From positions 1-24,550 of the forward strand of contig NIVC01005155.1 in the NCBI GenBank assembly GCA_002269645.1: a DNA stretch of 24,550 nt, written 5' to 3'. Shown in pieces: positions 1,972 through 24,550 of the stretch (its first letter is position 1; each line of letters opens with the position of its first letter). The translations under genes and the position numbers were made by a program. The notes below the pieces were generated by a model, which saw only the letters and a list, made by a program, of their open reading frames with translations, did not search any database and was not told where the DNA came from. This DNA is from Macrostomum lignano (Eukaryota).

Positions 1972-2630
1972 CCCCAGGTGGCAAGCATCGCCCACCCCAC
2001 AAGATAGCAAGCATCCCCAGATAGCAAACATCCCCCAGATAGCAAGCATCCCCCAATAGCAAGCATCCCCCCCTCCCAGATAGCAAGCATCCCCCAATAG
2101 CAAGCATCTACCCAGATAGCAAGCATCCCCCTCCCCCAGACAGCAAGTATCCCCCAGACAGCAAGCATCCCCCCAATAGCAAGCAACCCCAGATAGCAAG
2201 CATCCCCTAGACAGCAAACATCCCCTGAATGCAAGCAACCCCAGATAGCAAACATCCCAGATAGCAGGCATCCCCTAGATAGCAAGCATCCCCCAATTGC
2301 AAGCAACCCCAGATAGCAAGCATCTCCTAGACAGTAAGCACCCCCAGATAGCAAGTATCTCCTAGATAGCAAGCATCCCCTAGACAGCAAGCATCCCCCA
2401 GATAGCAAGTATCCCCCCAATAGCAAGCAAACCCATATAGCAAGCATCCCTCAGATAGCAAGCATCCCTCAGATAGCAAGCATCCCTTAGATAGCAAACA
2501 TCCCTGGATAGAAAAAATCCTGGGATAGATATTTCTTGGATAGAAAGAAATAGCTAGCAACCCCCTCTTAGCAAGCATCCTTCCAATAGCAAGCATCCCA
2601 GCAATAGCAAGCATCCCTCAGATAGCAAGT
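1972..2630 (+). repeat. Minisatellite, unit about 17-19 bp (consensus gatagcaagcatccccca), roughly 35 degenerate copies
   Basis: Direct tandem repetition of atagcaagcatcccc with a variable C-run. The overlapping CLLS/DACYLG ORFs are by-products of the repeat. Confidence 0.95.
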
Positions 2631-2655: not shown

Positions 2656-3243
2656 TTATAGTGGCTCCTTTATGTTTGGCATGACAATTATTTTACATTT
2701 GAAATGGTGGCTCTTTTTTGTTTGAAATGGTGGTTCTTTTATGTTTGAAATGGTGTCTCTTTTATGTTTGAAATGGTGTCTTTTTTGTTTGACATGGTGG
2801 CCCATTTATGTTTGGCATGACGCTTCTTTTGTTTAAATAGTATTTGACATACTGGCTCTTTTATGTTTGACATGGTGGCTTTTTTATATTGTACATGGTG
2901 CCTGTTTTATGTTTGAAATGGTGGCACTTTTATGTTTGACATGGCAGCTCTTTTATGTTTGACATAATGGTTCTTTTATGTTTGACATGACAATTCTTTT
3001 GTTTAAAATAGTTTTTGAGATAGTGACTCTTTTATGTGTCACATGATCCTTCTTTTATGTTTGAAATGGTGGCTCTTTTATGTTTGCCATAGTGGTTCTT
3101 TCATATTGTACATAGTGCCACTTTTATGCTTAATATGCCACTTTTATGTTTTGTATATGGTGACTCTTTATGTTTGACATGGGATCTCTTTTATGTTTTA
3201 CATGGTGCCACTTTTATGTTTCACAGTGTATTTCTTTTTTGTT
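2656..3243 (+). repeat. Minisatellite, 23-bp unit (consensus gaaatggtggctcttttatgttt), roughly 25 degenerate copies
   Basis: gaaatgg recurs at 2701, 2724, 2747 and 2770 (period 23) and continues with divergence to about 3243. Confidence 0.93.
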
Positions 3244-4553: not shown

Positions 4554-4831
4554 TGTGGCGGCCAGACTATGCAACCAGCAGCACCGTGCAGCTGCACTGG
4601 AAACCCCCCCTGCCAACCTCTGTCTAGCTGAGGTGGGGTGGTGCTGCACTGCGCTAGCCAGCTTGCTAAGCCAGGGGGGTTGGCATAGCCAATCATGCCA
4701 CGCCATATGTGTGCACTTCCCCGGCCCCTCAATAATCTTGTGCTGTTTTCACTTGTATAAATATACACGCAATGCAGTGCAACATCTTTGCTGCCATTCC
4801 ATCTATTGAAACAAAAAGGCCTTCTACCTCA
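4554..4831 (+). repeat. 5' LTR (278 bp) with TATAAATA box at 4756-4763
   Basis: Aligns end to end with 5594-5872; about 18 substitutions and 3 single-base indels counted by eye. Confidence 0.92.
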
Positions 4832-4832
4832 T

Positions 4833-4845
4833 TGGTGAGCCCGAC
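4833..4845 (+). promoter_or_regulatory. Primer-binding site, tRNA-Trp-like
   Basis: tggtgagcccgac starts 1 nt after the LTR end. It matches 12/13 to TGGTGACCCCGAC, the complement of the vertebrate tRNA-Trp 3' end as I recall it; the host tRNA is unknown. Confidence 0.7.
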
Positions 4846-5208
4846 TCCCAGCGCGGAACACTGGGCCTACCTGGTCAGCCCTATGCAGTCCTGGTAGCCA
4901 ACCGCCTTGGCCGACTGCAACAGCAGCACCGCAGCCCAACAGCACTGCAGCCTAGCAGCACCACAGCCCAGCAGCCACAACAGTACCCCGCAGCAACAAT
5001 TGGCCTAGTCAGCCTGCCCCCCACGGTAGCTCCTAGGGTCTCGCCTTTCGGACCCCACGTTGGACCAACCAGCGCCACACGCTGCAACAAATTTTAGGTT
5101 AGCACCGCTGCTGCTGGCCTAATGTCCCCAGCCTCTGTGCAGCAGCTTTGACCTGGCTCACGGCGGCAACTGACTGTCGATTGCTTTGGGTGTAGTCCAG
5201 CCGCGCGC

Positions 5209-5473
5209 CCCTGCTGCTTTCCGCGCCCGCCATGCGCCCTGCTGCTGCCTTTGGCGCCCACCTGGTGCCTTGCTGCTGCCTTCGGCAACTGTCTGGCACC
5301 CTGCTGCTGCCATCGGCGCCCTGCTGCCTTCGGCGCCCTCCTGCTGCCTTTGGCGCCCTGCTGCTGCTTTTGGCGCCCGCCTGGCGCTCTGCTGCCTTTG
5401 GCGCCGCCCGGCACCTGCTTGGCAACCTGCTGCCATTGGCGTCCACCTCGCGCCCCTGCCGCCTTTGGCGTCC
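5209..5473 (+). repeat. GC-rich internal repeat of the LTR element, about 10 copies of ctgctgcc(t/a)t(t/c)ggcgcc
   Basis: Motif seen at about 5209, 5242, 5273, 5304, 5321, 5341, 5361, 5388, 5427 and 5456. Confidence 0.8.
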
Positions 5474-5582
5474 AGGTGATTTCGGCGCCCACTCTTCTGC
5501 AGCTCCGCGGTCTTCGGCGCCCGCTCCTCGGCACTCTCGCTGCCTCGGCTACCACCTGACATTTGGGGCCTAGCTCAGTGCT

Positions 5583-5593
5583 GGGAGGAGCTG
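5583..5593 (+). promoter_or_regulatory. Polypurine tract
   Basis: gggaggag(ctg) lies immediately upstream of the 3' LTR start tgtggcg at 5594. Confidence 0.7.
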
Positions 5594-5872
5594 TGTGGCG
5601 GCCAGACTACGCAACCGGCAGCACCAGTGCAGCCGCACTGGAAAACCCCCCGCCAACCTCTGTCTAGCTGAGGTGGGGTGGTGCTGCACTGCGCTAGCCA
5701 GCTTGCTAAGCCAGGGGGGTTGGCGTAGCCAATCACGCCACGCCACATGTGCGCACCTCCCTCGGCCCCTCAAGAATCTCGCGCTGTTTTCACTTGTATA
5801 AATATACGTGCAATGTAGTGCAACATCTTCGCTGCCATTCCATCTATTGAAACAAAAAGGCCTTCCACCTCA
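5594..5872 (+). repeat. 3' LTR (279 bp) with TATAAATA box at 5797-5804
   Basis: Second copy of the LTR; retains CpGs that are lost in the 5' copy. Confidence 0.92.
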
Positions 5873-6941
5873 TTATTGTCTTTACATACAACATATATTG
5901 TCTGCTTTGCTTTTTCAATGCAAAACATATAGGTAAATTATTGTTGATAGACTATTGTCTTGTATATTTTTTGTATTAAGTGTAACCCTTATTGTATACT
6001 GTGAGTAAAGCTGCCAATCAACATTTATATCTATAAAAAGTGTAAAAAAGTATTTAAAAATATATTATACTTAAAATTGTATATTGTAAAGTTGCTTATT
6101 AAATATACAAATTGAATAAATACCATTTCTTATGAAATTCAGTTCATTTTATGAGAGTTTGCATTGTAGACCAAGGTTATATGCATTCAAAGAGTCACTT
6201 GTTTGGATTGCAATTGCTAAAGCTCAATAATAAGCTGAAGCATATATTTATTTGAATTATTTTACCTTTAAAACAAATCTGCAGTGGTAAAACTCTTTTT
6301 TGTTAAGAGAAGCTAATAATCCATTTTTATATAAGTAGTATGTAGGTAATATGGCTACTAAAATAGCAAACATTGCTGCTGCGGCTGCTTGGTGGATACA
6401 TGCAGAAAAAAAGTGTTGTCAAGAATTCTTATATGCTCCTCTATTAAATGTAGTAAAAGAATAGTCTTTGGAAATTATTCTAGAAAAATAATGAAATTTT
6501 CTGTTCCTCAACTTAAAACGAGTATATTTTACACTGAGGAAATAGGCAAAAATAGGCCTCAATAACTTTTTGGCAGATGTAAAGAGACATGTGCAGTTTT
6601 TTTTATATAATCATATTTAGAATAGCATACATTTCTGGGTTTTACTAAGCTTCGGAAATGCAAGCACAATTTTTATTCAACTGTTTTTTTATACCATCTA
6701 AACAGGAAGAAAAAATTTTTTCAAGATGTTAAAAAAATTACCAAATATAGTTGCTTGTATCATTAAAATATAAATTTTTTTCAATAATTGCTTTCTAACA
6801 AAAAATGAAATTTTGAAAGTACTTTTTGTGGCAACAAAATGTGTATATACTATAGGCCATATTGTGGATCATGTTATATGTATGCCGGAAAGTATCTGGC
6901 TATCTAGTAAAGTATATTCCAATAAAATATGCCAATTAAGC

Positions 6942-8105: not shown

Positions 8106-9410
8106 AATTAAGCCCTCTAGTAAATTGTATGCCAATAAAAATGTGATTAATAAGCACAAAAACTATGTAACAAACAAAACATAAATATTACCATAAAAAT
8201 AAAAGTGAAAACATATATCATTTTAAAAAATTACAAATTAAGACAAGTTCTTTATAGAAAATTTAGAATGCTGTTTGAAAATTAAATTTATTGTCATAAT
8301 TCTACAAATTAATTTTCTTGCCACAAAGAATTATTTAGTATAATTTACACAATTATTTAATATACTTCAATGCTTTTGTATGCTGCGCTGAAAGCTTGAA
8401 CAAGTATAGCTAAGAATTGTAAGCAAATGATTATGCATGGTGGTTGTATTTCCTCCATTTATGCTAGATATACGCCAGACAAAGCATTTGTATGCCATAT
8501 GTATGCTAGCTAAAGCGTTTGTACACCAGATGTATACCAGCTAAAGCATTTGTACGCCGGAATTTTCCACTGTATACTACACCTTCCACAATATGGACTA
8601 TAGGCTTATGCAAAAAAGACAAAATTCAGTGGGACACTACTCGGCATATATTAAATATATTTTTTTGTTTCTTTATCTAATTAGAATAAGTATAAACTCT
8701 TCTTTAATGTGTATATTTTGTTTTTACAAAAACATTTTCTATACTTTGTGATTACATTTTTAAAAACCCTATTTTACAATTTTGTGTAATTATCAGCTTA
8801 TGGTAACCTCACTAGAATCCCTAAAGACAATGTCTTTCTTACTTCTTTCTATTTCTAGTTTATATGTTTGCTTAGTACTTTATATAATTACACTGCAACA
8901 TTATTCATTTGCAAAGAACCTACTTTATACTAAAACTTGCCTTCTCTGTATGTAGGCCTATTGGCAAGACATAAGATCCTAACTTAAAGTCTAACAATAA
9001 TGCAAAAACCACAATTAGCATAGAAAGAGAAATAGCAAGCATAAAAACAGTAAACCAACAATGCTCACTCGCTGATCCAGGCTTGTCAAGTGATATGGAT
9101 TCAAGTTATTGTATGACATAGCAAGTACTATTGACTACAGACTCTTAAAAACAAAAAATAAATTAACTGGCTATTAAACTTTCGTTTATATTGGTGTGTT
9201 TTGGATATAATTACGATTTATTGTAACAAACAGCGCCAATCGCTAGAAAACATTAAAACTTTTTAGAATAGTAGCAAATAACAAACGCAATTATTAAATA
9301 GTAATAGGTTGCCGCAGTCACAGTTACCGACGCATTTGTTTCCCCATTGATATTCGCATTGATATTCGAATTTTAACAAAAGCAAAATACTAAAAGCAAC
9401 CCGTAGCATG

Positions 9411-11372
9411 AAACTTTACACAGAGTAAACTGCAACTGTGAAACAACTATTGGTCAAGTTTCAGCTCGATATGTAACTTTGGCTCTGAGCAGGAGCGATT
9501 TTCGATGTGTTCCATTTAAAATACATGTGATTCCAAAATTCATATTGATATTCGAGTACAGGTACTTCTGCTTCACTGATCTTGACGAAACTTTACACAG
9601 AGTAAACTGCAACCGTGAAACGACTATTGGTCAAGTTTCAGCTCGATATGTAACTTTGGCTCTGAGCAGGAGCGATTTTCGATGTGTTCCATTTAAAATA
9701 CATGTGATTCCAAAATTCGTATTGATATTCGAGTACAGGTACTTCTGCTTCACTGATCTTGACGAAAATTTACACAGAGTAAACTGCAACCGTGAAACGA
9801 CTATTGGTCAAGTTTCAGCTCGATATGTAACTTTGGCTCTGAGCAGGAGCGATTTTCGATGTGTTCCATTTAAAATACATGTGATTCCAAAATTCGTATT
9901 GATATTCGAGTACAGGTACTTCTGCTTCACTGATCTTGACGAAACTTTACACAGAGTAAACTGCAACCGTGAAACGACTATTGGTCAAGTTTCAGCTCGA
10001 TATGTAACTTTGGCTCTGAGCAGGAGCGATTTTTAATGTGTTCCATTTAAAATACATGTGATTCCAAAATTCATATTGATATTCGAGTACAGGTACTTCT
10101 GCTTCACTGATCTTGACGAAACTTTACACAGAGTAAACTGCAACCGTGAAACGACTATTGGTCAAGTTTCAGCTCGATATGTAACTTTGGCTCTGAGCAG
10201 GAGCGATTTTCGATGTGTTCCATTTAAAATACATGTGATTCCAAAATTCGTATTGATATTCGAGTACAGGTACTTCTGCTTCACTGATCTTGACGAAACT
10301 TTACACAGAGTAAACTGCAACCGTGAAACGACTATTGGTCAAGTTTCAGCTCGATATGTAACTTTGGCTCTGAGCAGGAGCGATTTTCGATGTGTTCCAT
10401 TTAAAATACATGTGATTCCAAAATTCGTATTGATATTCGAGTACAGGTACTTCTGCTTCACTGATCTTGACGAAACTTTACACAGAGTAAACTGCAACCG
10501 TGAAACGACTATTGGTCAAGTTTCAGCTCGATATGTAACTTTGGCTCTGAGCAGGAGCGATTTTTAATGTGTTCCATTTAAAATACATGTGATTCCAAAA
10601 TTCATATTGATATTCGAGTACAGGTACTTCTGCTTCACTGATCTTGACGAAACTTTACACAGAGTAAACTGCAACCGTGAAACGACTATTGGTCAAGTTT
10701 CAGCTCGATGTGTAACTTTGGCTCTGAGCAGGAGCGATTTTCGATGTGTTCCATTTAAAATACATGTGATTCCAAAATTCGTATTGATATTCGAGTACAG
10801 GTACTTCTGCTTCACTGATCTTGACGAAACTTTACACAGAGTAAACTGCAACCGTGAAACGACTATTGGTCAAGTTTCAGCTCGATATGTAACTTTGGCT
10901 CTGAGCAGGAGCGATTTTTAATGTGTTCCATTTAAAATACATGTGATTCCAAAATTCGTATTGATATTCGAGTACAGGTACTTCTGCTTCACTGATCTTG
11001 ACGAAACTTTACACAGAGTAAACTGCAACCGTGAAACGACTATTGGTCAAGTTTCAGTTCGATATGTAACTTTGGCTCTGAGCAGGAGCGATTTTTAATG
11101 TGTTCCATTTAAAATACATGTGATTCCAAAATTCATATTGATATTCGAGTACAGGTACTTCTGCTTCACTGATCTTGACGAAACTTTACACAGAGTAAAC
11201 TGCAACCGTGAAACGACTATTGGTCAAGTTTCAGCTCGATATGTAACTTTGGCTCTGAGCAGGAGCGATTTTCGATGTGTTCCATTTAAAATACATGTGA
11301 TTCCAAAATTCGTATTGATATTCGAGTACAGGTACTTCTGCTTCACTGATCTTGACGAAACTTTACACAGAG
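9411..11372 (+). repeat. Left arm: 11 complete plus one 15-bp partial copy of a 177-bp unit
   Basis: aaactttacacagag recurs at 9411, 9588, 9765 ... 11358 (period 177); copies differ at only a few sites. Confidence 0.97.
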
Positions 11373-12320
11373 CAGGCCAGCGTGCGCCGCGTCGACTTGA
11401 GCCTCGAGCGAGTCTTTCAGCGTCCAGGTCTCGGCGTTGTATAACAGGACGGTCTCGATCACCGCCTGGAACAGCGCCGCCCTCTGGCGGTCCGGTAGGG
11501 CCTCGGACTGCAGGACTGACCTTATAGAACGAAAGGCAGCCCAGGCAAGTCCTCGGCGACGCCGCAGATCCTCGCGGACGTCGGGAACCAGACCGCCGAG
11601 GTATACGAACTGCTGACATCTTGGAAGCTCACTCGCCTGTCCGTCAGCGCCTCGGCAGAAGATTGCAGCCTCGGTGTCGTCCGGCACGCATAGCACGACG
11701 GTCTTCTGCGTGTTGACCACCAGGCCGACGCTCGCCGCAACGGCAACCAGTCTATCCAGCTGTCGTTGGGCGCCCTCGACGGTCGAGGACAGCAGGGCGA
11801 GGTCATCGGCGTAGCCAAGCACGCTGAGCCGTCTCTCCGGTTGGCGTCGACCCACGCGTCGCCGCAGCAGGAAGCCGTCGTCGTTGGAAGGCAGAGCAGT
11901 CCGTAGCACCCAGTCAAGCACCAGAATAAATAGGAACGGCGCTAGCGTATCTCCCTGGAGCACCCCGGAGGATGTCTCGAAGAAATCCGATAGGCCGTCC
12001 GGTGTTGAGACAGCAGCCGTCGTGCCGTGGTATAGCGCCATGACAGCAGAAATCAGCAGGTCTGGCACGTTGTACGCACGGAGCACCTCTGGGAGCGCGT
12101 CCCTCACGACCGAGTCGAAGGCCTTCCTGAAATCGACGAAGATCAGGATCAGGGTCAACTGGCGGATGCTCGCCTCCTCGATGACTCGCCGAAGAGCCAG
12201 GATCTGCGTCACTGTGCTGCGATGGGGCCGGAATCCGTTCTGCTCAGGCCACAGGTACGGGTCCAGCACAGTCTGTAACCGCGATAGCAGCATGCGGTTG
12301 AACAGCTTCGCGGCGCAGCT
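11373..12320 (-). pseudogene. Reverse transcriptase fragment of an RTE-like non-LTR retrotransposon (3'-truncated)
   Basis: Stop-free frame with SCAAKLFNRM, EQNGFRPHRS, FVDFRKAFDSV, GVLQGDTLAPFLF, YADD, VYLG and LLYNAETWTL. These are LINE RT domains, and the Y-x-x-ETWTL tail is typical of RTE. The frame runs into the 177-bp repeat after HAGLL. Confidence 0.92.
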
Positions 12321-12901
12321 GCCCGCGCTGGGCCGGTCGCATCAGCGGGACTGCTTGCTCCGCAGCGGCTCGAACTGCAGCGCTCACCTCCGCGTACTCG
12401 GCTCCTCCACGCTTGTCGCCCAGCGCAGTGACAAAGGCACCGGCAAAGCGACGCCGCGTCATGGCGTCCCTGAGCGCGCGGTAGTAGCGCCGCGGTGGCC
12501 GCTTTGGCGGACGGTAGAGCGGGTCCCGAAGCCGAAGGTCGCAGATGAGCAGCCGATGGTCGGACCGCAGAGCCAGCGGCGTAATGGTGCGGCAGTTAGT
12601 GACGCGGCGGCGCTCACGAAAGCGCACAAGCACGTGGTCGAGCTGTGCCAGCCTCCGCGTAGCGTTCCGGCCGCGCGCGTTCCGCCGCCTCCGCTTGCAG
12701 CCCACGAAGGTCGCGAGCCTGCCCGGTGACTTGCGGAATCTGGTGTTGGCCGACACCATGTCCTGTCTCTCCAGGAAGTCCTCTAGCGCTCCGGTGTTGC
12801 CGTTCTCGCGCGCTGTCACAAACAGCGATCGCTCGGACCTACGCAGAACTGCGTTCAGGTCTCCGAGAATGACCACTGTGTCACGTTGCGCCATCTCCTC
12901 C
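12321..12901 (-). pseudogene. C-terminal half of an apurinic/apyrimidinic-type endonuclease of the same LINE (5'-truncated, joined out of frame to RT)
   Basis: VILGDLNA, LDHVLV and SDHRLL motifs of the LINE APE domain in a stop-free frame. The N-terminal APE motifs are absent, and the RT frame begins at about 12320 in a different frame. Confidence 0.88.
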
Positions 12902-13585
12902 ACCTGTACTCGAATATCAATATGAATTTTGGAATCACATGTATTTTAAATGGAACACATTAAAAATCGCTCCTGCTCAGAGCCAAAGTTACATATCGAG
13001 CTGAAACTTGACCAATAGTCGTTTCACGGTTGCAGTTTACTCTGTGTAAAGTTTCGTCAAGATCAGTGAAGCAGAAGTACCTGTACTCGAATATCAATAT
13101 GAATTTTGGAATCACATGTATTTTAAATGGAACACATCGAAAATCGCTCCTGCTCAGAGCCAAAGTTACATATCGAGCTGAAACTTGACCAATAGTCGTT
13201 TCACGGTTGCAGTTTACTCTGTGTAAAGTTTCGTCAAGATCAGTGAAGCAGAAGTACCTGTACTCGAATATCAATACGAATTTTGGAATCACATGTATTT
13301 TTAATGGAACACATCGAAAATCGCTCCTGCTCAGAGCCAAAGTTACATATCGAGCTGAAACTTGACCAATAGTCGTTTCACGGTTGCAGTTTACTCTGTG
13401 TAAAGTTTCGTCAAGATCAGTGAAGCAGAAGTACCTGTACTCGAATATCAATATGAATTTTGGAATCACATGTATTTTAAATGGAACACATTAAAAATCG
13501 CTCCTGCTCAGAGCCAAAGTTACATATCGAGCTGAAACTTGACCAATAGTCGTTTCACGGTTGCAGTTTACTCTGTGTAAAGTTT
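12902..13585 (-). repeat. Right arm: 3 complete plus one about 150-bp partial copy of the 177-bp unit, inverted
   Basis: Reverse complement of the left-arm unit (ctctgtgtaaagttt at period 177). Confidence 0.97.
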
Positions 13586-13931
13586 CATGCTACGGGTTGC
13601 TTTTAGTATTTTGCTTTTGTTAAAATTCGAATATCAATGCGAATATCAATGGGGAAACAAATGCGTCAGTTACCGTGCAAGTAAGGCTTACCTAAGCCTT
13701 AAATTCGCAATACCACAACAAATAGAAAATTAAATGCATAGGTTTCTTTAGCTAATTAAACAAATTATAAAGCAAGAAAATGCTACCGTACTAATTTTTT
13801 TGTAAAAAGCATACTTTAAATTTAAAAAAACTATTACAACAGTAGAACTCTTAAAATTTGACTTGAATTTTTAAAACGCCGGTATTAACCGAATTTTTCT
13901 AATTAAACTTTGCATGTCGTCATGCCGATCT

Positions 13932-14982
13932 CAAGGACTTCTAGACTAACAGGACGTAAAACTCAAAGATCGTGCAATTTTTTGGAGGCCACGATTTCCT
14001 GGAAAAAATACACTGCGAAGATAGGAAAAAATCAGTTTTTCGTCACAAAATCTGTGATTGTATTTGATCTGGGGCAGTCAAGACTACCATTCTTTTAATT
14101 TAACATGCACAATATGTTACTCTATTATATTTTCATATAGCTGTGTAGTGAAGTTTTCATTTTCATATTGTTTTCACTTTATTTCATAAGCCCAAAGTTG
14201 CAAACTCACAAGTGGCATTAGCCAAACTTTTTGTGTTGTTCTTTTTAAAGTAAAGTATAAAAACATTGCATGTAGGTACTCTTAGTCTTAAGCTATTATT
14301 GTTGGTTTAGTAACTATACTAATTCCTAGGCCTACTAGAACTAGACCTATCACTACACTATCTAGCCTAATAAGTAATTAAATTTAGACAATGACTTAAA
14401 GATTAGTATATTTAGATTTTTTTATTATATATAGATTACCAATAAATAGTTTCATATGGTTGGTTACCTAGGCTTGAGAAAGCTGTATTATCAGTTTTTA
14501 AGCCAAGCCTATATTTAGGACTAAGATTTAAGAAGAATAGACTTAATCACAAAAATAGGCCCTAACCATTTTTACTAGGTATCTATAAGAAAAAACATTG
14601 ATTAGTCCTTTTATAATTTTTATTTTAAGGGCTAAAAATATTATTATATTACAAATTTGAATAGCTTTTCTTTTCTTGAATTTGATATTTGGCTAATGCC
14701 ACTTGTGAGTTTGCAACTTTGGGCTTATGAAATAAAGTGAAAACAATATGAAAATGAAAACTTCACTACACAACTATATGAAAATATAATAGAGTAACAT
14801 ATTGTGCATGTTAAATTAAAAGAATGGTAGTCTTGACTGCCCCAGATCAAATACAATCACAGATTTTGTGACGAAAAACTGATTTTTTCCTATCTTCGCA
14901 GTGTATTTTTTCCAGGAAATCGTGGCCTCCAAAAAATTGCACGATCTTTGAGTTTTACGTCCTGTTAGTCTAGAAGTCCTTG
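13932..14982. mobile_element. Non-autonomous DNA transposon with 295-bp TIRs and 8-bp TSD (1051 bp; CA..TG ends, P- or hAT-like)
   Basis: 13932-14226 is the reverse complement of 14688-14982 with one mismatch seen (14141). Perfect TSD gccgatct at 13924-13931 and 14983-14990. Termini caagg..ccttg. 461-bp AT-rich spacer with no ORF. Confidence 0.92.
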
Positions 14983-15416
14983 GCCGATCTACAATATTGC
15001 ATACACTTTTTTGACATATCTTTCTTAAGCAACGGAAAAAAATTTCCATCCGATAGTCACTCCTAAGTTCCAATCTCCTCTCCAATTGTTATTGCCCGCT
15101 GGCAGGGGCGGATACCAGCAGAGGGTCCGCCTCCCCGCCCCCAAAGTTGACCTCAGCCAGGCGCCCATTGTGAGACACGCAAGACACCCACTAAGCCAGA
15201 GTGATGGACAATGCCTACAACCAACTGGCGCGTCTGGCTGTAAGCAAAGCTGTTTGCATGGAAGGCGCGAGTTTACATGTAAAAATAAAGGCCTGTGCTG
15301 CAAAAACAACAACTAAACAACAAAGTACACTGGATGGTCTCTAGTGTCACAGGGAACGTAACTACTGCTACAGTGCTGCAATTAATATATAGGCGCAATG
15401 AGTCACAGTTCAAAAA

Positions 15417-18400
15417 GACACGGTTTAAGCTAGAGGCGCAGTTGCCTTCTAATAACTACACCAAGCAGTCTCGCGCATGCACAGGCGTTCGAAAATACGC
15501 TCACGGCGTGTTATTCTGCTTCCGTGCACTTGTATTTTGCACGCAGTCAGTTTGTTTAGACAAATAGACACGGTTTAAGCTAGAGGCGCAGTTGCCTTCT
15601 AATAACTACACCAAGCAGTCTCGCGCATGCACAGGCGTTCGAAAATACGCTCACGGCGTGTTATTCTGCTTCCGTGCACTTGTATTTTGCACGCAGTCAG
15701 TTTGTTTAGACAAATAGACACGGTTTAAGCTAGAGGCGCAGTTGCCTTCTAATAACTACACCAAGCAGTCTCGCGCATGCACAGGCGTTCGAAAATACGC
15801 TCACGGCGTGTTATTCTGCTTCCGTGCACTTGTATTTTGCACGCAGTCAGTTTGTTTAGACAAATAGACACGGTTTAAGCTAGAGGCGCAGTTGCCTTCT
15901 AATAACTACACCAAGCAGTCTCGCGCATGCACAGGCGTTCGAAAATACGCTCACGGCGTGTTATTCTGCTTCCGTGCACTTGTATTTTGCACGCAGTCAG
16001 TTTGTTTAGACAAATAGACACGGTTTAAGCTAGAGGCGCAGTTGCCTTCTAATAACTACACCAAGCAGTCTCGCGCATGCACAGGCGTTCGAAAATACGC
16101 TCACGGCGTGTTATTCTGCTTCCGTGCACTTGTATTTTGCACGCAGTCAGTTTGTTTAGACAAATAGACACGGTTTAAGCTAGAGGCGCAGTTGCCTTCT
16201 AATAACTACACCAAGCAGTCTCGCGCATGCACAGGCGTTCGAAAATACGCTCACGGCGTGTTATTCTGCTTCCGTGCACTTGTATTTTGCACGCAGTCAG
16301 TTTGTTTAGACAAATAGACACGGTTTAAGCTAGAGGCGCAGTTGCCTTCTAATAACTACACCAAGCAGTCTCGCGCATGCACAGGCGTTCGAAAATACGC
16401 TCACGGCGTGTTATTCTGCTTCCGTGCACTTGTATTTTGCACGCAGTCAGTTTGTTTAGACAAATAGACACGGTTTAAGCTAGAGGCGCAGTTGCCTTCT
16501 AATAACTACACCAAGCAGTCTCGCGCATGCACAGGCGTTCGAAAATACGCTCACGGCGTGTTATTCTGCTTCCGTGCACTTGTATTTTGCACGCAGTCAG
16601 TTTGTTTAGACAAATAGACACGGTTTAAGCTAGAGGCGCAGTTGCCTTCTAATAACTACACCAAGCAGTCTCGCGCATGCACAGGCGTTCGAAAATACGC
16701 TCACGGCGTGTTATTCTGCTTCCGTGCACTTGTATTTTGCACGCAGTCAGTTTGTTTAGACAAATAGACACGGTTTAAGCTAGAGGCGCAGTTGCCTTCT
16801 AATAACTACACCAAGCAGTCTCGCGCATGCACAGGCGTTCGAAAATACGCTCACGGCGTGTTATTCTGCTTCCGTGCACTTGTATTTTGCACGCAGTCAG
16901 TTTGTTTAGACAAATAGACACGGTTTAAGCTAGAGGCGCAGTTGCCTTCTAATAACTACACCAAGCAGTCTCGCGCATGCACAGGCGTTCGAAAATACGC
17001 TCACGGCGTGTTATTCTGCTTCCGTGCACTTGTATTTTGCACGCAGTCAGTTTCTTTAGACAAATAGACACGGTTTAAGCTAGAGGCGCAGTTGCCTTCT
17101 AATAACTACACCAAGCAGTCTCGCGCATGCACAGGCGTTCGAAAATACGCTCACGGCGTGTTATTCTGCTTCCGTGCACTTGTATTTTGCACGCAGTCAG
17201 TTTGTTTAGACAAATAGACACGGTTTAAGCTAGAGGCGCAGTTGCCTTCTAATAACTACACCAAGCAGTCTCGCGCATGCACAGGCGTTCGAAAATACGC
17301 TCACGGCGTGTTATTCTGCTTCCGTGCACTTGTATTTTGCACGCAGTCAGTTTGTTTAGACAAATAGACACGGTTTAAGCTAGAGGCGCAGTTGCCTTCT
17401 AATAACTACACCAAGCAGTCTCGCGCATGCACAGGCGTTCGAAAATACGCTCACGGCGTGTTATTCTGCTTCCGTGCACTTGTATTTTGCACGCAGTCAG
17501 TTTGTTTAGACAAATAGACACGGTTTAAGCTAGAGGCGCAGTTGCCTTCTAATAACTACACCAAGCAGTCTCGCGCATGCACAGGCGTTCGAAAATACGC
17601 TCACGGCGTGTTATTCTGCTTCCGTGCACTTGTATTTTGCACGCAGTCAGTTTGTTTAGACAAATAGACACGGTTTAAGCTAGAGGCGCAGTTGCCTTCT
17701 AATAACTACACCAAGCAGTCTCGCGCATGCACAGGCGTTCGAAAATACGCTCACGGCGTGTTATTCTGCTTCCGTGCACTTGTATTTTGCACGCAGTCAG
17801 TTTGTTTAGACAAATAGACACGGTTTAAGCTAGAGGCGCAGTTGCCTTCTAATAACTACACCAAGCAGTCTCGCGCATGCACAGGCGTTCGAAAATACGC
17901 TCACGGCGTGTTATTCTGCTTCCGTGCACTTGTATTTTGCACGCAGTCAGTTTGTTTAGACAAATAGACACGGTTTAAGCTAGAGGCGCAGTTGCCTTCT
18001 AATAACTACACCAAGCAGTCTCGCGCATGCACAGGCGTTCGAAAATACGCTCACGGCGTGTTATTCTGCTTCCGTGCACTTGTATTTTGCACGCAGTCAG
18101 TTTGTTTAGACAAATAGACACGGTTTAAGCTAGAGGCGCAGTTGCCTTCTAATAACTACACCAAGCAGTCTCGCGCATGCACAGGCGTTCGAAAATACGC
18201 TCACGGCGTGTTATTCTGCTTCCGTGCACTTGTATTTTGCACGCAGTCAGTTTGTTTAGACAAATAGACACGGTTTAAGCTAGAGGCGCAGTTGCCTTCT
18301 AATAACTACACCAAGCAGTCTCGCGCATGCACAGGCGTTCGAAAATACGCTCACGGCGTGTTATTCTGCTTCCGTGCACTTGTATTTTGCACGCAGTCAG

Positions 18401-21400
18401 TTTGTTTAGACAAATAGACACGGTTTAAGCTAGAGGCGCAGTTGCCTTCTAATAACTACACCAAGCAGTCTCGCGCATGCACAGGCGTTCGAAAATACGC
18501 TCACGGCGTGTTATTCTGCTTCCGTGCACTTGTATTTTGCACGCAGTCAGTTTGTTTAGACAAATAGACACGGTTTAAGCTAGAGGCGCAGTTGCCTTCT
18601 AATAACTACACCAAGCAGTCTCGCGCATGCACAGGCGTTCGAAAATACGCTCACGGCGTGTTATTCTGCTTCCGTGCACTTGTATTTTGCACGCAGTCAG
18701 TTTGTTTAGACAAATAGACACGGTTTAAGCTAGAGGCGCAGTTGCCTTCTAATAACTACACCAAGCAGTCTCGCGCATGCACAGGCGTTCGAAAATACGC
18801 TCACGGCGTGTTATTCTGCTTCCGTGCACTTGTATTTTGCACGCAGTCAGTTTGTTTAGACAAATAGACACGGTTTAAGCTAGAGGCGCAGTTGCCTTCT
18901 AATAACTACACCAAGCAGTCTCGCGCATGCACAGGCGTTCGAAAATACGCTCACGGCGTGTTATTCTGCTTCCGTGCACTTGTATTTTGCACGCAGTCAG
19001 TTTGTTTAGACAAATAGACACGGTTTAAGCTAGAGGCGCAGTTGCCTTCTAATAACTACACCAAGCAGTCTCGCGCATGCACAGGCGTTCGAAAATACGC
19101 TCACGGCGTGTTATTCTGCTTCCGTGCACTTGTATTTTGCACGCAGTCAGTTTCTTTAGACAAATAGACACGGTTTAAGCTAGAGGCGCAGTTGCCTTCT
19201 AATAACTACACCAAGCAGTCTCGCGCATGCACAGGCGTTCGAAAATACGCTCACGGCGTGTTATTCTGCTTCCGTGCACTTGTATTTTGCACGCAGTCAG
19301 TTTGTTTAGACAAATAGACACGGTTTAAGCTAGAGGCGCAGTTGCCTTCTAATAACTACACCAAGCAGTCTCGCGCATGCACAGGCGTTCGAAAATACGC
19401 TCACGGCGTGTTATTCTGCTTCCGTGCACTTGTATTTTGCACGCAGTCAGTTTGTTTAGACAAATAGACACGGTTTAAGCTAGAGGCGCAGTTGCCTTCT
19501 AATAACTACACCAAGCAGTCTCGCGCATGCACAGGCGTTCGAAAATACGCTCACGGCGTGTTATTCTGCTTCCGTGCACTTGTATTTTGCACGCAGTCAG
19601 TTTGTTTAGACAAATAGACACGGTTTAAGCTAGAGGCGCAGTTGCCTTCTAATAACTACACCAAGCAGTCTCGCGCATGCACAGGCGTTCGAAAATACGC
19701 TCACGGCGTGTTATTCTGCTTCCGTGCACTTGTATTTTGCACGCAGTCAGTTTGTTTAGACAAATAGACACGGTTTAAGCTAGAGGCGCAGTTGCCTTCT
19801 AATAACTACACCAAGCAGTCTCGCGCATGCACAGGCGTTCGAAAATACGCTCACGGCGTGTTATTCTGCTTCCGTGCACTTGTATTTTGCACGCAGTCAG
19901 TTTGTTTAGACAAATAGACACGGTTTAAGCTAGAGGCGCAGTTGCCTTCTAATAACTACACCAAGCAGTCTCGCGCATGCACAGGCGTTCGAAAATACGC
20001 TCACGGCGTGTTATTCTGCTTCCGTGCACTTGTATTTTGCACGCAGTCAGTTTGTTTAGACAAATAGACACGGTTTAAGCTAGAGGCGCAGTTGCCTTCT
20101 AATAACTACACCAAGCAGTCTCGCGCATGCACAGGCGTTCGAAAATACGCTCACGGCGTGTTATTCTGCTTCCGTGCACTTGTATTTTGCACGCAGTCAG
20201 TTTGTTTAGACAAATAGACACGGTTTAAGCTAGAGGCGCAGTTGCCTTCTAATAACTACACCAAGCAGTCTCGCGCATGCACAGGCGTTCGAAAATACGC
20301 TCACGGCGTGTTATTCTGCTTCCGTGCACTTGTATTTTGCACGCAGTCAGTTTGTTTAGACAAATAGACACGGTTTAAGCTAGAGGCGCAGTTGCCTTCT
20401 AATAACTACACCAAGCAGTCTCGCGCATGCACAGGCGTTCGAAAATACGCTCACGGCGTGTTATTCTGCTTCCGTGCACTTGTATTTTGCACGCAGTCAG
20501 TTTGTTTAGACAAATAGACACGGTTTAAGCTAGAGGCGCAGTTGCCTTCTAATAACTACACCAAGCAGTCTCGCGCATGCACAGGCGTTCGAAAATACGC
20601 TCACGGCGTGTTATTCTGCTTCCGTGCACTTGTATTTTGCACGCAGTCAGTTTGTTTAGACAAATAGACACGGTTTAAGCTAGAGGCGCAGTTGCCTTCT
20701 AATAACTACACCAAGCAGTCTCGCGCATGCACAGGCGTTCGAAAATACGCTCACGGCGTGTTATTCTGCTTCCGTGCACTTGTATTTTGCACGCAGTCAG
20801 TTTGTTTAGACAAATAGACACGGTTTAAGCTAGAGGCGCAGTTGCCTTCTAATAACTACACCAAGCAGTCTCGCGCATGCACAGGCGTTCGAAAATACGC
20901 TCACGGCGTGTTATTCTGCTTCCGTGCACTTGTATTTTGCACGCAGTCAGTTTGTTTAGACAAATAGACACGGTTTAAGCTAGAGGCGCAGTTGCCTTCT
21001 AATAACTACACCAAGCAGTCTCGCGCATGCACAGGCGTTCGAAAATACGCTCACGGCGTGTTATTCTGCTTCCGTGCACTTGTATTTTGCACGCAGTCAG
21101 TTTGTTTAGACAAATAGACACGGTTTAAGCTAGAGGCGCAGTTGCCTTCTAATAACTACACCAAGCAGTCTCGCGCATGCACAGGCGTTCGAAAATACGC
21201 TCACGGCGTGTTATTCTGCTTCCGTGCACTTGTATTTTGCACGCAGTCAGTTTGTTTAGACAAATAGACACGGTTTAAGCTAGAGGCGCAGTTGCCTTCT
21301 AATAACTACACCAAGCAGTCTCGCGCATGCACAGGCGTTCGAAAATACGCTCACGGCGTGTTATTCTGCTTCCGTGCACTTGTATTTTGCACGCAGTCAG

Positions 21401-24400
21401 TTTGTTTAGACAAATAGACACGGTTTAAGCTAGAGGCGCAGTTGCCTTCTAATAACTACACCAAGCAGTCTCGCGCATGCACAGGCGTTCGAAAATACGC
21501 TCACGGCGTGTTATTCTGCTTCCGTGCACTTGTATTTTGCACGCAGTCAGTTTGTTTAGACAAATAGACACGGTTTAAGCTAGAGGCGCAGTTGCCTTCT
21601 AATAACTACACCAAGCAGTCTCGCGCATGCACAGGCGTTCGAAAATACGCTCACGGCGTGTTATTCTGCTTCCGTGCACTTGTATTTTGCACGCAGTCAG
21701 TTTGTTTAGACAAATAGACACGGTTTAAGCTAGAGGCGCAGTTGCCTTCTAATAACTACACCAAGCAGTCTCGCGCATGCACAGGCGTTCGAAAATACGC
21801 TCACGGCGTGTTATTCTGCTTCCGTGCACTTGTATTTTGCACGCAGTCAGTTTGTTTAGACAAATAGACACGGTTTAAGCTAGAGGCGCAGTTGCCTTCT
21901 AATAACTACACCAAGCAGTCTCGCGCATGCACAGGCGTTCGAAAATACGCTCACGGCGTGTTATTCTGCTTCCGTGCACTTGTATTTTGCACGCAGTCAG
22001 TTTGTTTAGACAAATAGACACGGTTTAAGCTAGAGGCGCAGTTGCCTTCTAATAACTACACCAAGCAGTCTCGCGCATGCACAGGCGTTCGAAAATACGC
22101 TCACGGCGTGTTATTCTGCTTCCGTGCACTTGTATTTTGCACGCAGTCAGTTTGTTTAGACAAATAGACACGGTTTAAGCTAGAGGCGCAGTTGCCTTCT
22201 AATAACTACACCAAGCAGTCTCGCGCATGCACAGGCGTTCGAAAATACGCTCACGGCGTGTTATTCTGCTTCCGTGCACTTGTATTTTGCACGCAGTCAG
22301 TTTGTTTAGACAAATAGACACGGTTTAAGCTAGAGGCGCAGTTGCCTTCTAATAACTACACCAAGCAGTCTCGCGCATGCACAGGCGTTCGAAAATACGC
22401 TCACGGCGTGTTATTCTGCTTCCGTGCACTTGTATTTTGCACGCAGTCAGTTTGTTTAGACAAATAGACACGGTTTAAGCTAGAGGCGCAGTTGCCTTCT
22501 AATAACTACACCAAGCAGTCTCGCGCATGCACAGGCGTTCGAAAATACGCTCACGGCGTGTTATTCTGCTTCCGTGCACTTGTATTTTGCACGCAGTCAG
22601 TTTCTTTAGACAAATAGACACGGTTTAAGCTAGAGGCGCAGTTGCCTTCTAATAACTACACCAAGCAGTCTCGCGCATGCACAGGCGTTCGAAAATACGC
22701 TCACGGCGTGTTATTCTGCTTCCGTGCACTTGTATTTTGCACGCAGTCAGTTTCTTTAGACAAATAGACACGGTTTAAGCTAGAGGCGCAGTTGCCTTCT
22801 AATAACTACACCAAGCAGTCTCGCGCATGCACAGGCGTTCGAAAATACGCTCACGGCGTGTTATTCTGCTTCCGTGCACTTGTATTTTGCACGCAGTCAG
22901 TTTCTTTAGACAAATAGACACGGTTTAAGCTAGAGGCGCAGTTGCCTTCTAATAACTACACCAAGCAGTCTCGCGCATGCACAGGCGTTCGAAAATACGC
23001 TCACGGCGTGTTATTCTGCTTCCGTGCACTTGTATTTTGCACGCAGTCAGTTTCTTTAGACAAATAGACACGGTTTAAGCTAGAGGCGCAGTTGCCTTCT
23101 AATAACTACACCAAGCAGTCTCGCGCATGCACAGGCGTTCGAAAATACGCTCACGGCGTGTTATTCTGCTTCCGTGCACTTGTATTTTGCACGCAGTCAG
23201 TTTCTTTAGACAAATAGACACGGTTTAAGCTAGAGCGCAGTTGCCTTCTAATAACTACACCAAGCAGTCTCGCGCATGCACAGGCGTTCGAAAATACGCT
23301 CACGGCGTGTTATTCTGCTTCCGTGCACTTGTATTTTGCACGCAGTCAGTTTCTTTAGACAAATAGACACGGTTTAAGCTAGAGGCGCAGTTGCCTTCTA
23401 ATAACTACACCAAGCAGTCTCGCGCATGCACAGGCGTTCGAAAATACGCTCACGGCGTGTTATTCTGCTTCCGTGCACTTGTATTTTGCACGCAGTCAGT
23501 TTCTTTAGACAAATAGACACGGTTTAAGCTAGAGGCGCAGTTGCCTTCTAATAACTACACCAAGCAGTCTCGCGCATGCACAGGCGTTCGAAAATACGCT
23601 CACGGCGTGTTATTCTGCTTCCGTGCACTTGTATTTTGCACGCAGTCAGTTTCTTTAGACAAATAGACACGGTTTAAGCTAGAGGCAGTTGCCTTCTAAT
23701 AACTACACCAAGCAGTCTCGCGCATGCACAGGCGTTCGAAAATACGCTCACGGCGTGTTATTCTGCTTCGTGCACTTGTATTTACGCAGTCAGTTTCTTT
23801 AGACAAATAGACACGGTTTAAGCTAGAGCGCAGTTGCCTTCTAATAACTACACCAAGCAGTCTCGCGCATGCACAGGCGTTGAAAATACGCTCACGCGTG
23901 TTATTCTACTTTTATTTTGCACGCAGTCAGTGCACTTGTATTTTGCACGCAGAAAGACACGGTTTAAGCTAAGAGCGCAGTCCTTCTAATAACTACACCA
24001 AGGCAGTCTCGCGCAGAAACAGGCGTTGAAAATACGCTCACGCGTGTTATTCTGCTTTGTATTTTGCACGCAGTCAGTTTGTCGACAATAACACGGTTTA
24101 AGCTAGAGGCGCAGTGCCTTCTAATAACTACACCAAGCAGTCTCGCGCATGCACAGGCGTTCGAAAAAATACGCTCACGCGTATTCTGCTAGTGCCTTGT
24201 ATTTTGCACGCAGTCAGTTCTTTAGACAAATAGACACGGTTTAAGCTAGAGCGCAGTTTCCCTTAATAACTACACCAAGGCATCTCGCGCATGCACAGGC
24301 GTTCGAAAATACGCTCACGGCGTGTTATTCTGTTCCGTGCACTTGTATTTGCACGCAGTCAGTATTTCTTCTACAAATAGACACGGTTTAAGCTAGCATT

Positions 24401-24550
24401 TGCCTTCTATACTACACGAACACATCTCGCGCATGCACAGCGTTCGAAAATACGCTCACCGCGTGTTATTCTGCTTCCATAAAAAAGTCGTTCCTTAGAC
24501 AAATAGACACGTTTAAGCTAGAGGCGCAGTTGCCTTCTAATAACTACACC
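15417..24550 (+). repeat. 150-bp tandem satellite array, about 61 copies, open at the window end
   Basis: gacacggtttaagctagaggcgcag... recurs every 150 bp from 15417. Copies are identical to about 23235 apart from one g/c site, then accumulate indels. Confidence 0.99.

What the first reader, a model, noticed from the sequence alone, without database searches (positions are those of the whole stretch)
9330..13666. Foldback transposon whose entire loop is a captured retrotransposon endonuclease/RT fragment
Seen: inverted arms of 177-bp tandem units and a perfect 9-bp TSD enclose exactly 1529 bp of RTE-like LINE and nothing else. The LINE piece lacks its 5' end, its 3' end/tail and any TSD of its own, so it does not look like an ordinary retrotransposition into the element. 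Inference: Pack-MULE-like capture of Class I DNA by a Class II vehicle, probably by template switching during gap repair. Such a hybrid could move an RT domain with intact YADD as a DNA transposon, or act as a hairpin/small-RNA source directed against the RTE family.
Basis: partly seen in the sequence, partly recalled or inferred. Interest (0 to 1): 0.8.

Follow-up and report, generated by a model that had tools for sequence, protein, structure and literature searches.

The report
Foldback transposon with dead LINE spacer
A 4.3-kb foldback-type DNA transposon, probably in the flatworm Macrostomum, carries a broken piece of an RTE-type LINE as the only DNA between its two inverted arms; the structure is real, but this kind of patchwork transposon is already known and how the piece got there cannot be settled from one copy.

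Summary
Window 9330-13666 is bounded by a perfect 9-bp direct repeat (CAGTTACCG). Its two identical 80-nt termini are followed by 177-bp tandem units, 11.1 on the left and 3.9 on the right, and the arms are 98-100% complementary. The 1529 bp between them is entirely RTE-type LINE on the minus strand.

The LINE piece is broken in three places. It lacks at least 109 codons at the 5' end and about 100 codons plus the UTR at the 3' end. It is therefore a dead fragment, not a usable RT. All three breakpoints carry 2-3 nt of microhomology.

The nearest RTE proteins are from Macrostomum lignano (about 97% identity in the RT), so that is the probable host.

The best reading is a non-autonomous foldback element of likely Mutator/Foldback type whose fragile centre was repaired by patching in RTE sequence. 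An ordinary 5'-truncated RTE insertion followed by a deletion across the centre explains the same structure almost as well. Whether the chimera ever transposed is untested, because no other copy could be reached.

The closest precedents are Ssk-FB4 and other Pack-TIRs, Tetris, Tm1 and endonuclease-independent LINE insertions. This is a new member of a known kind, of modest interest.

The parts
9321..9329 (.). Left copy of the 9-bp target-site duplication CAGTTACCG
   Evidence: Read directly. Identical to 13667-13675 and abuts the first base of the left terminus.
9330..9409 (+). Left 80-nt unique terminus of the foldback element. It starts ACGCATTTGTTTCCCC and holds two copies of the 11-mer ATTGATATTCG.
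   Evidence: 80/80 identical to the reverse complement of 13587-13666. 11-mer copies at 9346 and 9358.
9410..11372 (+). Left arm: 11.1 tandem copies of the 177-bp unit, each with one ATTGATATTCG motif. A three-unit B-A-A variant pattern runs through L4-L9. The arm ends at unit position 16.
   Evidence: TRF: period 177, 11.1 copies, 98% matches. Per-unit variants. Motif positions.
11373..12320 (-). RT part of the RTE-type LINE fragment (ORF 12293..11343, YADD present). It starts inside RT at SCAAKLFNR and breaks off after AAHAGLL, about 100 codons before the ORF end of relatives.
   Evidence: Pfam RVT_1 E=5.5e-24, profile positions 26-202 of 205. tblastn: P0123 residues 520-838 and P0001 residues 2-323 of 420. 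blastn homology to L001/L002 stops at 11371 while both continue more than 400 nt.
12319..12320 (-). Internal deletion junction within the LINE fragment. About 209-213 codons (about 0.63 kb) are missing, with a frameshift and AG(C) microhomology.
   Evidence: P0123 residues 311-519 and P0121 residues 1668-1880 have no counterpart in the window. Junction sequence and reading frames.
12321..12901 (-). C-terminal part of the AP-endonuclease domain plus linker of the RTE-type LINE fragment. It starts at ...VEEMAQRDTVVILGDLNA; at least 109 N-terminal codons (189 in P0122) and the 5' UTR are missing.
   Evidence: Pfam Exo_endo_phos profile positions 146-203 of 225, E=0.0028. phmmer hits P0121/P0122 (Macrostomum lignano) and P0123. 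tblastn alignments.
12902..13586 (-). Right arm: 3.9 tandem copies of the 177-bp unit in inverted orientation. Its inner end lies at unit position 154. The variant order B-A-A-B matches left units L4-L7.
   Evidence: TRF, inverted repeats I1-I14, per-unit variants.
13587..13666 (-). Right 80-nt unique terminus
   Evidence: 80/80 match to the left terminus. The 27-mer terminus occurs exactly twice in the window against 0 expected.
13667..13675 (.). Right copy of the 9-bp target-site duplication CAGTTACCG
   Evidence: Read directly.

Best explanation
The feature is a young, non-autonomous foldback-type DNA transposon, most likely in the genome of Macrostomum lignano or a close relative.

Each end consists of an 80-nt terminus followed by an array of 177-bp units. 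The terminus carries an 11-nt motif twice and every unit carries it once, which makes the motif a candidate transposase-binding site (inferred). The 9-bp TSD points to a Mutator/Foldback-type transposase supplied in trans (inferred; none is present in the window).

The spacer between the arms is a dead fragment of an RTE-type LINE. The most likely origin is that the centre of the long palindrome broke, as hairpin- or cruciform-prone inverted repeats tend to do. The ends were then resected unequally, which would explain arms of 11.1 and 3.9 units ending at different unit phases. The gap was bridged by microhomology-primed synthesis or joining that used RTE sequence, copied either from a genomic RTE copy (gap filling or template switching, as for Pack-TIRs) or from RTE cDNA/RNA (endonuclease-independent LINE insertion). 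The internal 0.63-kb deletion is either a further template jump in the same event or was inherited from the donor.

The result is a quasi-palindrome with a 1.5-kb spacer, which should be more stable than a spacerless one.

Shown: the anatomy, the three breakpoints, the microhomologies and the non-functionality of the RT.
Inferred: the break-repair origin, the transposase class and the host.
Unknown: whether the capture came before or after insertion at this site.
For: - Anatomy and TSD.
- Motif ATTGATATTCG: 19 exact copies, all inside the element, two per terminus and one per unit, against 0 expected.
- The LINE piece lacks both natural ends and has no tail or TSD.
- All three breakpoints show 2-3 nt shared between the joined partners: CT at the RTE 3'/left-arm junction, GT or GGT at the RTE 5'/right-arm junction, and AG(C) at the internal deletion. 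The chance of at least 2 nt is about 1/16 per junction.
- The arms end at different unit phases (16 and 154) and differ in length, as expected after asymmetric loss at a central break.
- Precedents. A Foldback element (FB4) that captured Ssk, and animal Pack-TIRs formed by microhomology-guided gap filling at internal fragile sites (PMC8277862). Endonuclease-independent L1 insertions, which lack the marks of endonuclease-mediated insertion and come with microhomology at both ends and target deletions (PMC1920257). Longer, more similar arms with a short or absent spacer are the most break-prone (PMC7999016).
- Host: the RT part is 213/220 identical to M. lignano UniRef A0A1I8G3L1 outside gene-model gaps.
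Against: - Only one copy is available, so nothing here separates break-repair capture from ordinary retrotransposition followed by deletion. The 5' junction looks exactly like a normal 5'-truncated LINE junction, which also tends to show microhomology.
- Two of the three microhomology calls rest on relatives that are 85-88% identical, or on codons inferred from M. lignano proteins, not on the true donor sequence.
- No empty site, no donor copy and no read-level support could be examined.
- The transposase class is inferred from TSD length alone.
Confidence: 0.5

Rival explanations
1. Ordinary retrotransposition followed by deletion. An RTE copy inserted by target-primed reverse transcription into the inner part of the right arm and was 5'-truncated in the usual way. 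That produced the 12901/12902 junction. Later, one deletion across the unstable palindrome centre removed the RTE 3' end and tail, the inner right-arm units, the centre and the inner left-arm units. That produced the 11372/11373 junction. The internal 0.63-kb deletion is a third, independent event, or was already present in the source copy.
For: - The LINE 5' end faces the right arm, so the 5' junction has the form of a standard truncated insertion.
- The right arm is much shorter than the left (3.9 against 11.1 units), and the arms end at unrelated unit phases, as a single asymmetric central deletion would produce.
- Long inverted repeats with a short or absent spacer are prone to breakage and deletion (PMC7999016).
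- Microhomology at deletion junctions is expected from end joining.
Against: - It needs two or three independent events that together remove every trace of the RTE 3' end, its TSD and the original centre.
- No remnant of right-arm sequence lies on the left side of the LINE piece.
- Three of three breakpoints with 2-3 nt microhomology fits one multi-jump repair event as well or better.
Confidence: 0.3
2. Assembly artefact. The tandem arrays and inverted arms were mis-joined or collapsed by the assembler, so the real locus differs. It could, for example, be two separate half-elements, a different array length, or an RTE copy that is not truly enclosed.
For: Inverted repeats built from 98-99% identical 177-bp units are hard to assemble, and unit numbers may be wrong. 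The probable host assemblies are long-read Canu assemblies of a repeat-rich genome with a duplicated chromosome (PMC5730564). No reads could be examined.
Against: - A missed-adapter palindrome would be symmetrical and would also invert the flanks. Here the arms are unequal, the flanks are unique, and a direct 9-bp TSD sits exactly at both termini.
- Both FB/RTE junctions are clean single breakpoints with microhomology.
- The unit-variant pattern is coherent within each arm.
Confidence: 0.07
3. The chimera has a function. Either it is a DNA-transposon carrier that spreads a usable RT domain, or it is a hairpin or small-RNA locus that silences the RTE family.
For: The RT ORF of 316 codons is open and keeps YADD. 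The neighbourhood is rich in transposons and satellite DNA, like many piRNA-source regions. M. lignano has an active piRNA pathway (PMC4604429).
Against: - The RT lacks profile positions 1-25 and the last 100 residues, and the endonuclease is a C-terminal stump behind a frameshift.
- A hairpin transcript would make double-stranded RNA from the arms, not from the RTE loop.
- No expression or small-RNA data could be examined, and no second copy is known.
Confidence: 0.05

Closest known systems
Ssk-FB4 and other animal Pack-TIRs (Tan et al. 2021, PMC8277862)
   Same: A Foldback-type element with long repetitive TIRs and 9-10-bp TSDs whose interior is foreign DNA, joined with short microhomology. 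The proposed origins are gap filling at internal fragile sites or replication template switching.
   Different: The captured DNA here is a dead fragment of another transposon (an RTE LINE), not a host gene. Only one copy is known, whereas Ssk-FB4 has three loci with distinct TSDs. There is no evidence of transcription or selection. The host is a flatworm, not a fly.
Tetris (Drosophila virilis foldback element, PMC4079207)
   Same: Non-autonomous. Its TIRs consist of a flanking domain plus a variable number of tandem repeats of about 220 bp, with a middle domain of variable composition and no coding capacity. TSDs are 8-10 bp, and it was assigned to Mutator on that basis.
   Different: No sequence similarity was tested or is expected. 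Here the unit is 177 bp and the middle domain is identifiable as an RTE fragment. The 177-bp unit was not seen as a free satellite in this window, and the adjacent 150-bp satellite is unrelated.
Tm1 Mutator/Foldback family of root-knot nematodes (PMC3169594)
   Same: Composite foldback-like TIRs of variable length, 9-bp TSDs and mostly non-autonomous copies. This family shows that FB-like elements exist outside insects.
   Different: Tm1 has members that encode a Phantom/Mutator-type transposase. No partner is known here. Homology of the termini was not tested.
Endonuclease-independent (non-classical) LINE insertions at double-strand breaks (Sen et al. 2007, PMC1920257)
   Same: A LINE piece without the marks of endonuclease-mediated insertion (here: no TSD of its own, no 3' tail, truncated at both ends), with microhomology at both junctions and loss of target DNA.
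   Different: Those cases are human L1; this is an RTE-type element in a probable flatworm. A cDNA origin cannot be told apart from copying of genomic RTE DNA.
Galileo (P-superfamily foldback-like element of Drosophila, PMC3573991)
   Same: Long, internally repetitive TIRs whose length changes by tandem-repeat expansion. Chimeric copies with exchanged central regions occur, and most copies are non-autonomous two-TIR copies.
   Different: Galileo makes 7-bp TSDs and belongs to the P superfamily. The TSD here is 9 bp.

Membership tests
Foldback-like (FB-type) class II elements | Long terminal inverted repeats built largely of tandem subrepeats, able to fold back | tested here: met
   Arms of 776 nt are 99% complementary. 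177-bp units occur 11.1 and 3.9 times behind identical 80-nt termini.
Foldback-like (FB-type) class II elements | Target-site duplication of about 9 bp (Mutator/Foldback range) | tested here: met
   A perfect 9-bp CAGTTACCG lies at both ends. FB4 has 9-10 bp, Tetris 8-10 bp and Tm1 9 bp.
Foldback-like (FB-type) class II elements | Repeated family in the host genome with different TSDs (evidence of mobility) | not testable with these tools
   No host genome is available. The FB 22-mer and 20-mer are absent from metagenome and viral contigs. The translated unit has no protein hits.
Foldback-like (FB-type) class II elements | Mobilised by a Mutator/Phantom-type transposase that shares the termini | not testable with these tools
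   No transposase ORF lies in the element or elsewhere in the window. A partner could not be searched for.
Pack-TIR / Pack-MULE | TIRs and TSD enclose DNA copied from a non-transposon host gene | tested here: not met
   The enclosed DNA is an RTE-type LINE fragment with EN and RT domains. It is not a host gene, so this is a chimeric transposon rather than a Pack-TIR in the strict sense.
Pack-TIR / Pack-MULE | Microhomology at the breakpoints between transposon and filler | tested here: met
   CT at 11371-11372 and GT/GGT at about 12901-12903. The 5' one is inferred from the Val codon in M. lignano proteins.
Pack-TIR / Pack-MULE | Identifiable parental copy; several chimeric copies with different TSDs if transposition-dependent | not testable with these tools
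   Family members exist in M. lignano (P0121, P0122), but neither the donor copy nor other chimeric copies can be searched for.
RTE clade of non-LTR retrotransposons (identity of the loop) | A single ORF of about 1000 aa with an N-terminal AP-endonuclease and an RT, no RNase H or C-terminal zinc knuckle, and a short 3' UTR with short tandem repeats (Malik and Eickbush 1998, from my own knowledge) | tested here: inconclusive
   The complete relative P0123 is 938 aa, with Exo_endo_phos at 9-207, RVT_1 at 501-754 and no other Pfam domain. The 3' UTRs of L001 and L002 contain (GTT)n runs. No phylogeny against reference RTE elements was made.
Endonuclease-independent LINE insertion | No TSD around the LINE, 3' truncation or no tail, and microhomology at both ends | tested here: met
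   The flanks are inverted FB units at phases 16 and 154, with no direct repeat. Relatives continue more than 400 nt past the 3' breakpoint. Microhomologies are shown.
Endonuclease-independent LINE insertion | Insert derived from RNA/cDNA rather than from genomic DNA; pre-insertion site known | not testable with these tools
   This needs the host genome (a donor copy carrying the same internal deletion) and an empty or RTE-free FB allele.

The most novel reading that the evidence does not exclude
The chimera formed once and has since been mobilised as a unit, making a multicopy 'Pack-FB' family in Macrostomum that carries antisense RTE sequence around the genome. Read-through transcripts from insertion sites would then feed the piRNA pathway against the RTE family. 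That would make a class II element a spreading vector of anti-class I immunity.
Probability: 0.1. Interest if true: 0.55.

Novelty: new member of a known kind. Interest (0 to 1): 0.3.

Why it matters
The locus gives a cleanly resolved example, with three mapped breakpoints, of how the fragile centre of a foldback transposon can acquire foreign DNA.

No paper in the searched library describes a foldback-type transposon in a flatworm, so the family itself would be a useful addition to Macrostomum repeat annotation.

If further copies share the same junctions, it would be a second animal case, after Ssk-FB4, of a foldback element that moves captured DNA. It would also be a tractable one: M. lignano has transgenesis, piRNA data and recently duplicated chromosomes, which allow filled and unfilled alleles to be compared.

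As it stands, it is one dead chimeric transposon in a repeat-rich region.

Tried and rejected
Searches for other copies, all negative:
- The translated 177-bp array (an open 59-codon frame) against 5.8 billion proteins gave no hits.
- An exact 22-mer of the unit was absent from metagenome contigs and from viral contigs.
- An exact 20-mer of the terminus was absent from metagenome contigs.
- Exact look-ups of the junction-spanning RT ORF and of M. lignano proteins P0121 and P0022 found nothing on record.
- The contigs of the best metagenomic relatives, L001 and L002, are only 1.1-1.4 kb. They hold RTE sequence only and no FB.

Other negative or uninformative results:
- Rfam and tRNA scans of the window found nothing.
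- The promoter/terminator scan uses bacterial consensus patterns and is not informative for a eukaryote.
- The 177-bp unit is unrelated to the neighbouring 150-bp satellite and to the rest of the window.
- No protein in the representative library runs across the internal deletion junction, so no RTE subfamily with the same deletion was seen.

Ideas considered and rejected:
- Two independent half-element insertions either side of a resident RTE. The outer flanks share one 9-bp TSD, which argues against this.
- A missed-adapter palindrome artefact. The arms are unequal and the flanks are unique and direct.
- The RTE ends being natural termini. Relatives extend well beyond both.
- Origin of both arms by a simple inverted duplication of a solo end plus flanking RTE. 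The inner arm ends lie at different unit phases, and the unit-variant orders are not mirror images.

Full report
**1. What is in the sequence**

Window 9330-13666 is a 4337-bp inverted-repeat element.
- Both ends carry the same 80-nt unique terminus, 9330-9409 and the reverse complement of 13587-13666, matching at 80 of 80 positions.
- Inside each terminus lies an array of a 177-bp unit: 9410-11372 (11.1 copies) and 12902-13586 (3.9 copies). Both arrays are 98% internally identical.
- The arms are 98-100% complementary to each other over up to 776 nt.
- The nine bases CAGTTACCG occur immediately outside both termini, at 9321-9329 and 13667-13675, and the next bases outward differ. The duplication is therefore exactly 9 bp. 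The chance of that at fixed positions is about 4e-6.
- The 27-nt terminus occurs only at these two places in the window.
- The 11-mer ATTGATATTCG occurs 19 times in the window, all inside the element: twice in each terminus, 12 nt apart, and once in every 177-bp unit. Zero are expected by chance.

This repetition of a terminal motif through the subterminal arrays resembles other foldback-like transposons. It argues that the array belongs to the inverted repeat and is not an unrelated satellite.

The unit is unrelated to anything else in the window, including the 150-bp satellite that starts 1.7 kb downstream.

**2. The arms are not mirror images**

Units fall into two main variants: A (the consensus) and B (94T, 95A, 133A).
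- Left units L4-L9 follow a three-unit B-A-A pattern.
- The right arm, read from the outside in, is B-A-A-B. This matches L4-L7 rather than L1-L4.
- The left arm stops at unit position 16 and the right arm at unit position 154.

The arrays have therefore been reshaped by unequal exchange or loss, as described for Galileo and FB4.

**3. The loop**

The 1529 bp between the arms (11373-12901) has 64% G+C, against 38% in the arms and 31% in the flanks.

On the minus strand it encodes two ORFs.
- One is 219 codons, with the C-terminal third of an AP-endonuclease domain plus linker.
- The other is 316 codons, with a reverse transcriptase that retains YADD.

I compared it with a complete single-ORF relative, P0123. 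That protein is 938 aa, with Exo_endo_phos at 9-207, RVT_1 at 501-754 and no other domain. The window aligns only to residues 110-310 and 520-838. Three pieces are therefore missing:
- at least 109 N-terminal codons plus the 5' UTR;
- about 209 codons in the middle (213 relative to P0121), with a change of reading frame at about 12319/12320;
- the last 100 codons plus the 3' UTR.

At the DNA level, two metagenomic relatives (L001 at 85% and L002 at 88% identity) align up to window position 11371. Both then continue for more than 400 nt through the rest of the ORF, the stop codon and a UTR with (GTT)n runs.

No other RTE sequence is present in the window.

**4. Breakpoints**

- 3' junction, LINE strand. 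The window reads GGCCTGCT|CTGTGTAAAG. RTE relatives read GGCCTGCT|GCGCGC. The FB unit reads GTTTACT|CTGTGTAAAG. The bases CT are shared.
- 5' junction. The window reads GAGTACAGGT|GGAGGAGATG and the FB unit reads GAGTACAGGT|ACTTCTG. The M. lignano proteins read ...V-R-V-E-E-M-A..., so the GT of the Val codon, and possibly the preceding G, is shared.
- Internal deletion. ...CGCGGGCAG|CTGCGCCGCG joins Q-R-G-Q to (S)-C-A-A-K, with AG or AGC shared.

Two to three shared bases at three of three breakpoints is more than chance would give often (about 1/16 each). Two of the three calls, however, rest on relatives or on inferred codons, not on the true donor.

**5. Host**

The strongest matches to both halves of the loop are two Macrostomum lignano UniRef entries, A0A1I8G3L1 and A0A1I8FST8. 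Outside gene-model gaps, the RT part is 213/220 identical to the first.

The window therefore probably comes from M. lignano or a close relative. This is an inference, since RTE elements are known to transfer horizontally.

The M. lignano genome is more than half repeats, with 15% simple and tandem repeats. It was assembled from PacBio data and has a duplicated large chromosome (PMC5730564).

**6. How the RTE piece got there**

The structure excludes two independent half-element insertions, because there is only one TSD. It also excludes a symmetric palindrome artefact, because the arms are unequal and the flanks are unique.

Two routes remain.

(a) Break repair at the palindrome centre.
- Long, nearly perfect inverted repeats with little or no spacer are break-prone (PMC7999016).
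- Unequal resection would explain the unequal arms and the unrelated end phases.
- The gap would then be bridged with RTE sequence by microhomology-primed copying of a genomic RTE copy. This is the gap-filling or template-switching route documented for animal Pack-TIRs, including the Foldback-based Ssk-FB4 (PMC8277862).
- Alternatively, RTE cDNA could have been captured. Endonuclease-independent L1 insertions show no signs of endonuclease-mediated insertion, carry microhomology at both ends and are associated with target deletions (PMC1920257).
- The internal deletion could be one more template jump.

(b) Ordinary target-primed insertion of a 5'-truncated RTE into the inner right arm. A later deletion across the centre would remove the RTE 3' end, and a separate internal deletion would follow.

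Route (a) needs one complex event and fits the three microhomologies. Route (b) needs two or three common events. I put them at about 0.5 and 0.3, with about 0.07 for assembly error.

**7. What the TSD does and does not show**

The TSD shows that the two termini integrated together at this site. It does not show that the RTE was already inside. In animals, single-copy Pack-TIRs mostly formed in place, after insertion.

The 'class II vehicle moving class I DNA' claim therefore needs other copies with the same junctions and different TSDs. I could not reach any. The host genome is in none of the searchable DNA collections, and all indirect routes came back empty.

**8. The functional suggestions**

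- The RT cannot be expected to work (section 3).
- A hairpin transcript of the element would form double-stranded RNA from the 177-bp arms and leave the RTE as the single-stranded loop. It is therefore not an obvious source of anti-RTE siRNAs.
- A role as piRNA-cluster content cannot be excluded. The window is rich in transposons and satellite DNA, and M. lignano has an active piRNA pathway (PMC4604429). Nothing here supports such a role, however.

**9. Comparison with known elements, and novelty**

In architecture this is a foldback-like element of the Tetris, FB4 or Tm1 kind:
- tandem-repeat TIRs, a 9-bp TSD, no coding capacity and a variable middle domain;
- Galileo is similar in form but makes 7-bp TSDs.

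Membership of the Mutator/Foldback superfamily rests on TSD length only.

In origin it resembles Pack-TIRs, but the strict definition (a captured host gene) is not met, because the filler is another transposon.

I found no paper in the held library that describes a foldback-type transposon in flatworms. The family is probably undescribed, but the kind is known.

Verdict: a real feature, a new member of a known kind, of modest interest (0.3). The interest would rise if the chimera proves to be multicopy.

Noticed in passing
window 13933-14981 (TSD at 13925-13932 and 14982-14989): A second inverted-repeat element lies about 260 bp downstream of the foldback. It has 295-nt terminal inverted repeats that are 99.7% identical (13932-14226 against 14982-14688), a 461-nt AT-rich spacer and an 8-bp direct repeat GCCGATCT at both ends. 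This suggests a young non-autonomous element of hAT- or P-like type. No coding capacity was seen.
   Followed up: partly
window 4554-5874: A small LTR-like element. It has 282-nt direct repeats at 93% identity (4554-4833 and 5594-5874) that start with TG and end with CA, and it is flanked by TTAT on both sides. A primer-binding-site-like TTGGTGAGCCCG follows the left repeat. The interior is G+C-rich and made of 17-31-nt tandem repeats. It looks like a non-autonomous TRIM-type retroelement.
   Followed up: partly
window 15411-24478: A 150-bp satellite with 60.8 copies at 98% identity, running nearly to the end of the window. It is unrelated to the 177-bp foldback unit.
   Followed up: partly
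window 2002-2504 and 2661-3225: Two minisatellites: an 18-bp unit AGATAGCAAGCATCCCCC (about 28 copies) and a 23-bp unit TTTTATGTTTGAAATGGTGGCTC (in higher-order 46- and 171-bp periods).
   Followed up: no
window 9479-11527 and 12960-13469: The 177-bp unit is 59 codons long, and one frame stays open through the A-type units, giving ORFs of 110-185 codons. The B variant (CG to TA at unit positions 94-95) creates a TAA stop in that frame. The translation has no homologues among 5.8 billion proteins, so the open frame is probably accidental.
   Followed up: yes
proteins P0121 and P0122 (Macrostomum lignano UniRef A0A1I8G3L1 and A0A1I8FST8): These database 'proteins' are gene models that fuse RTE endonuclease/RT sequence with unrelated parts (a CCHC gag-like region and low-complexity tails). 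They contain frameshifted RTE stretches, so they are transposon-derived mis-annotations, not host genes.
   Followed up: partly
loci L001 (ENA ERZ2272135) and L002 (JGI 3300037309): Environmental metagenome contigs carry RTE copies 85-88% identical in DNA to the window's fragment. This suggests DNA from related flatworms or other animals in those samples, or horizontal spread of this RTE family.
   Followed up: no
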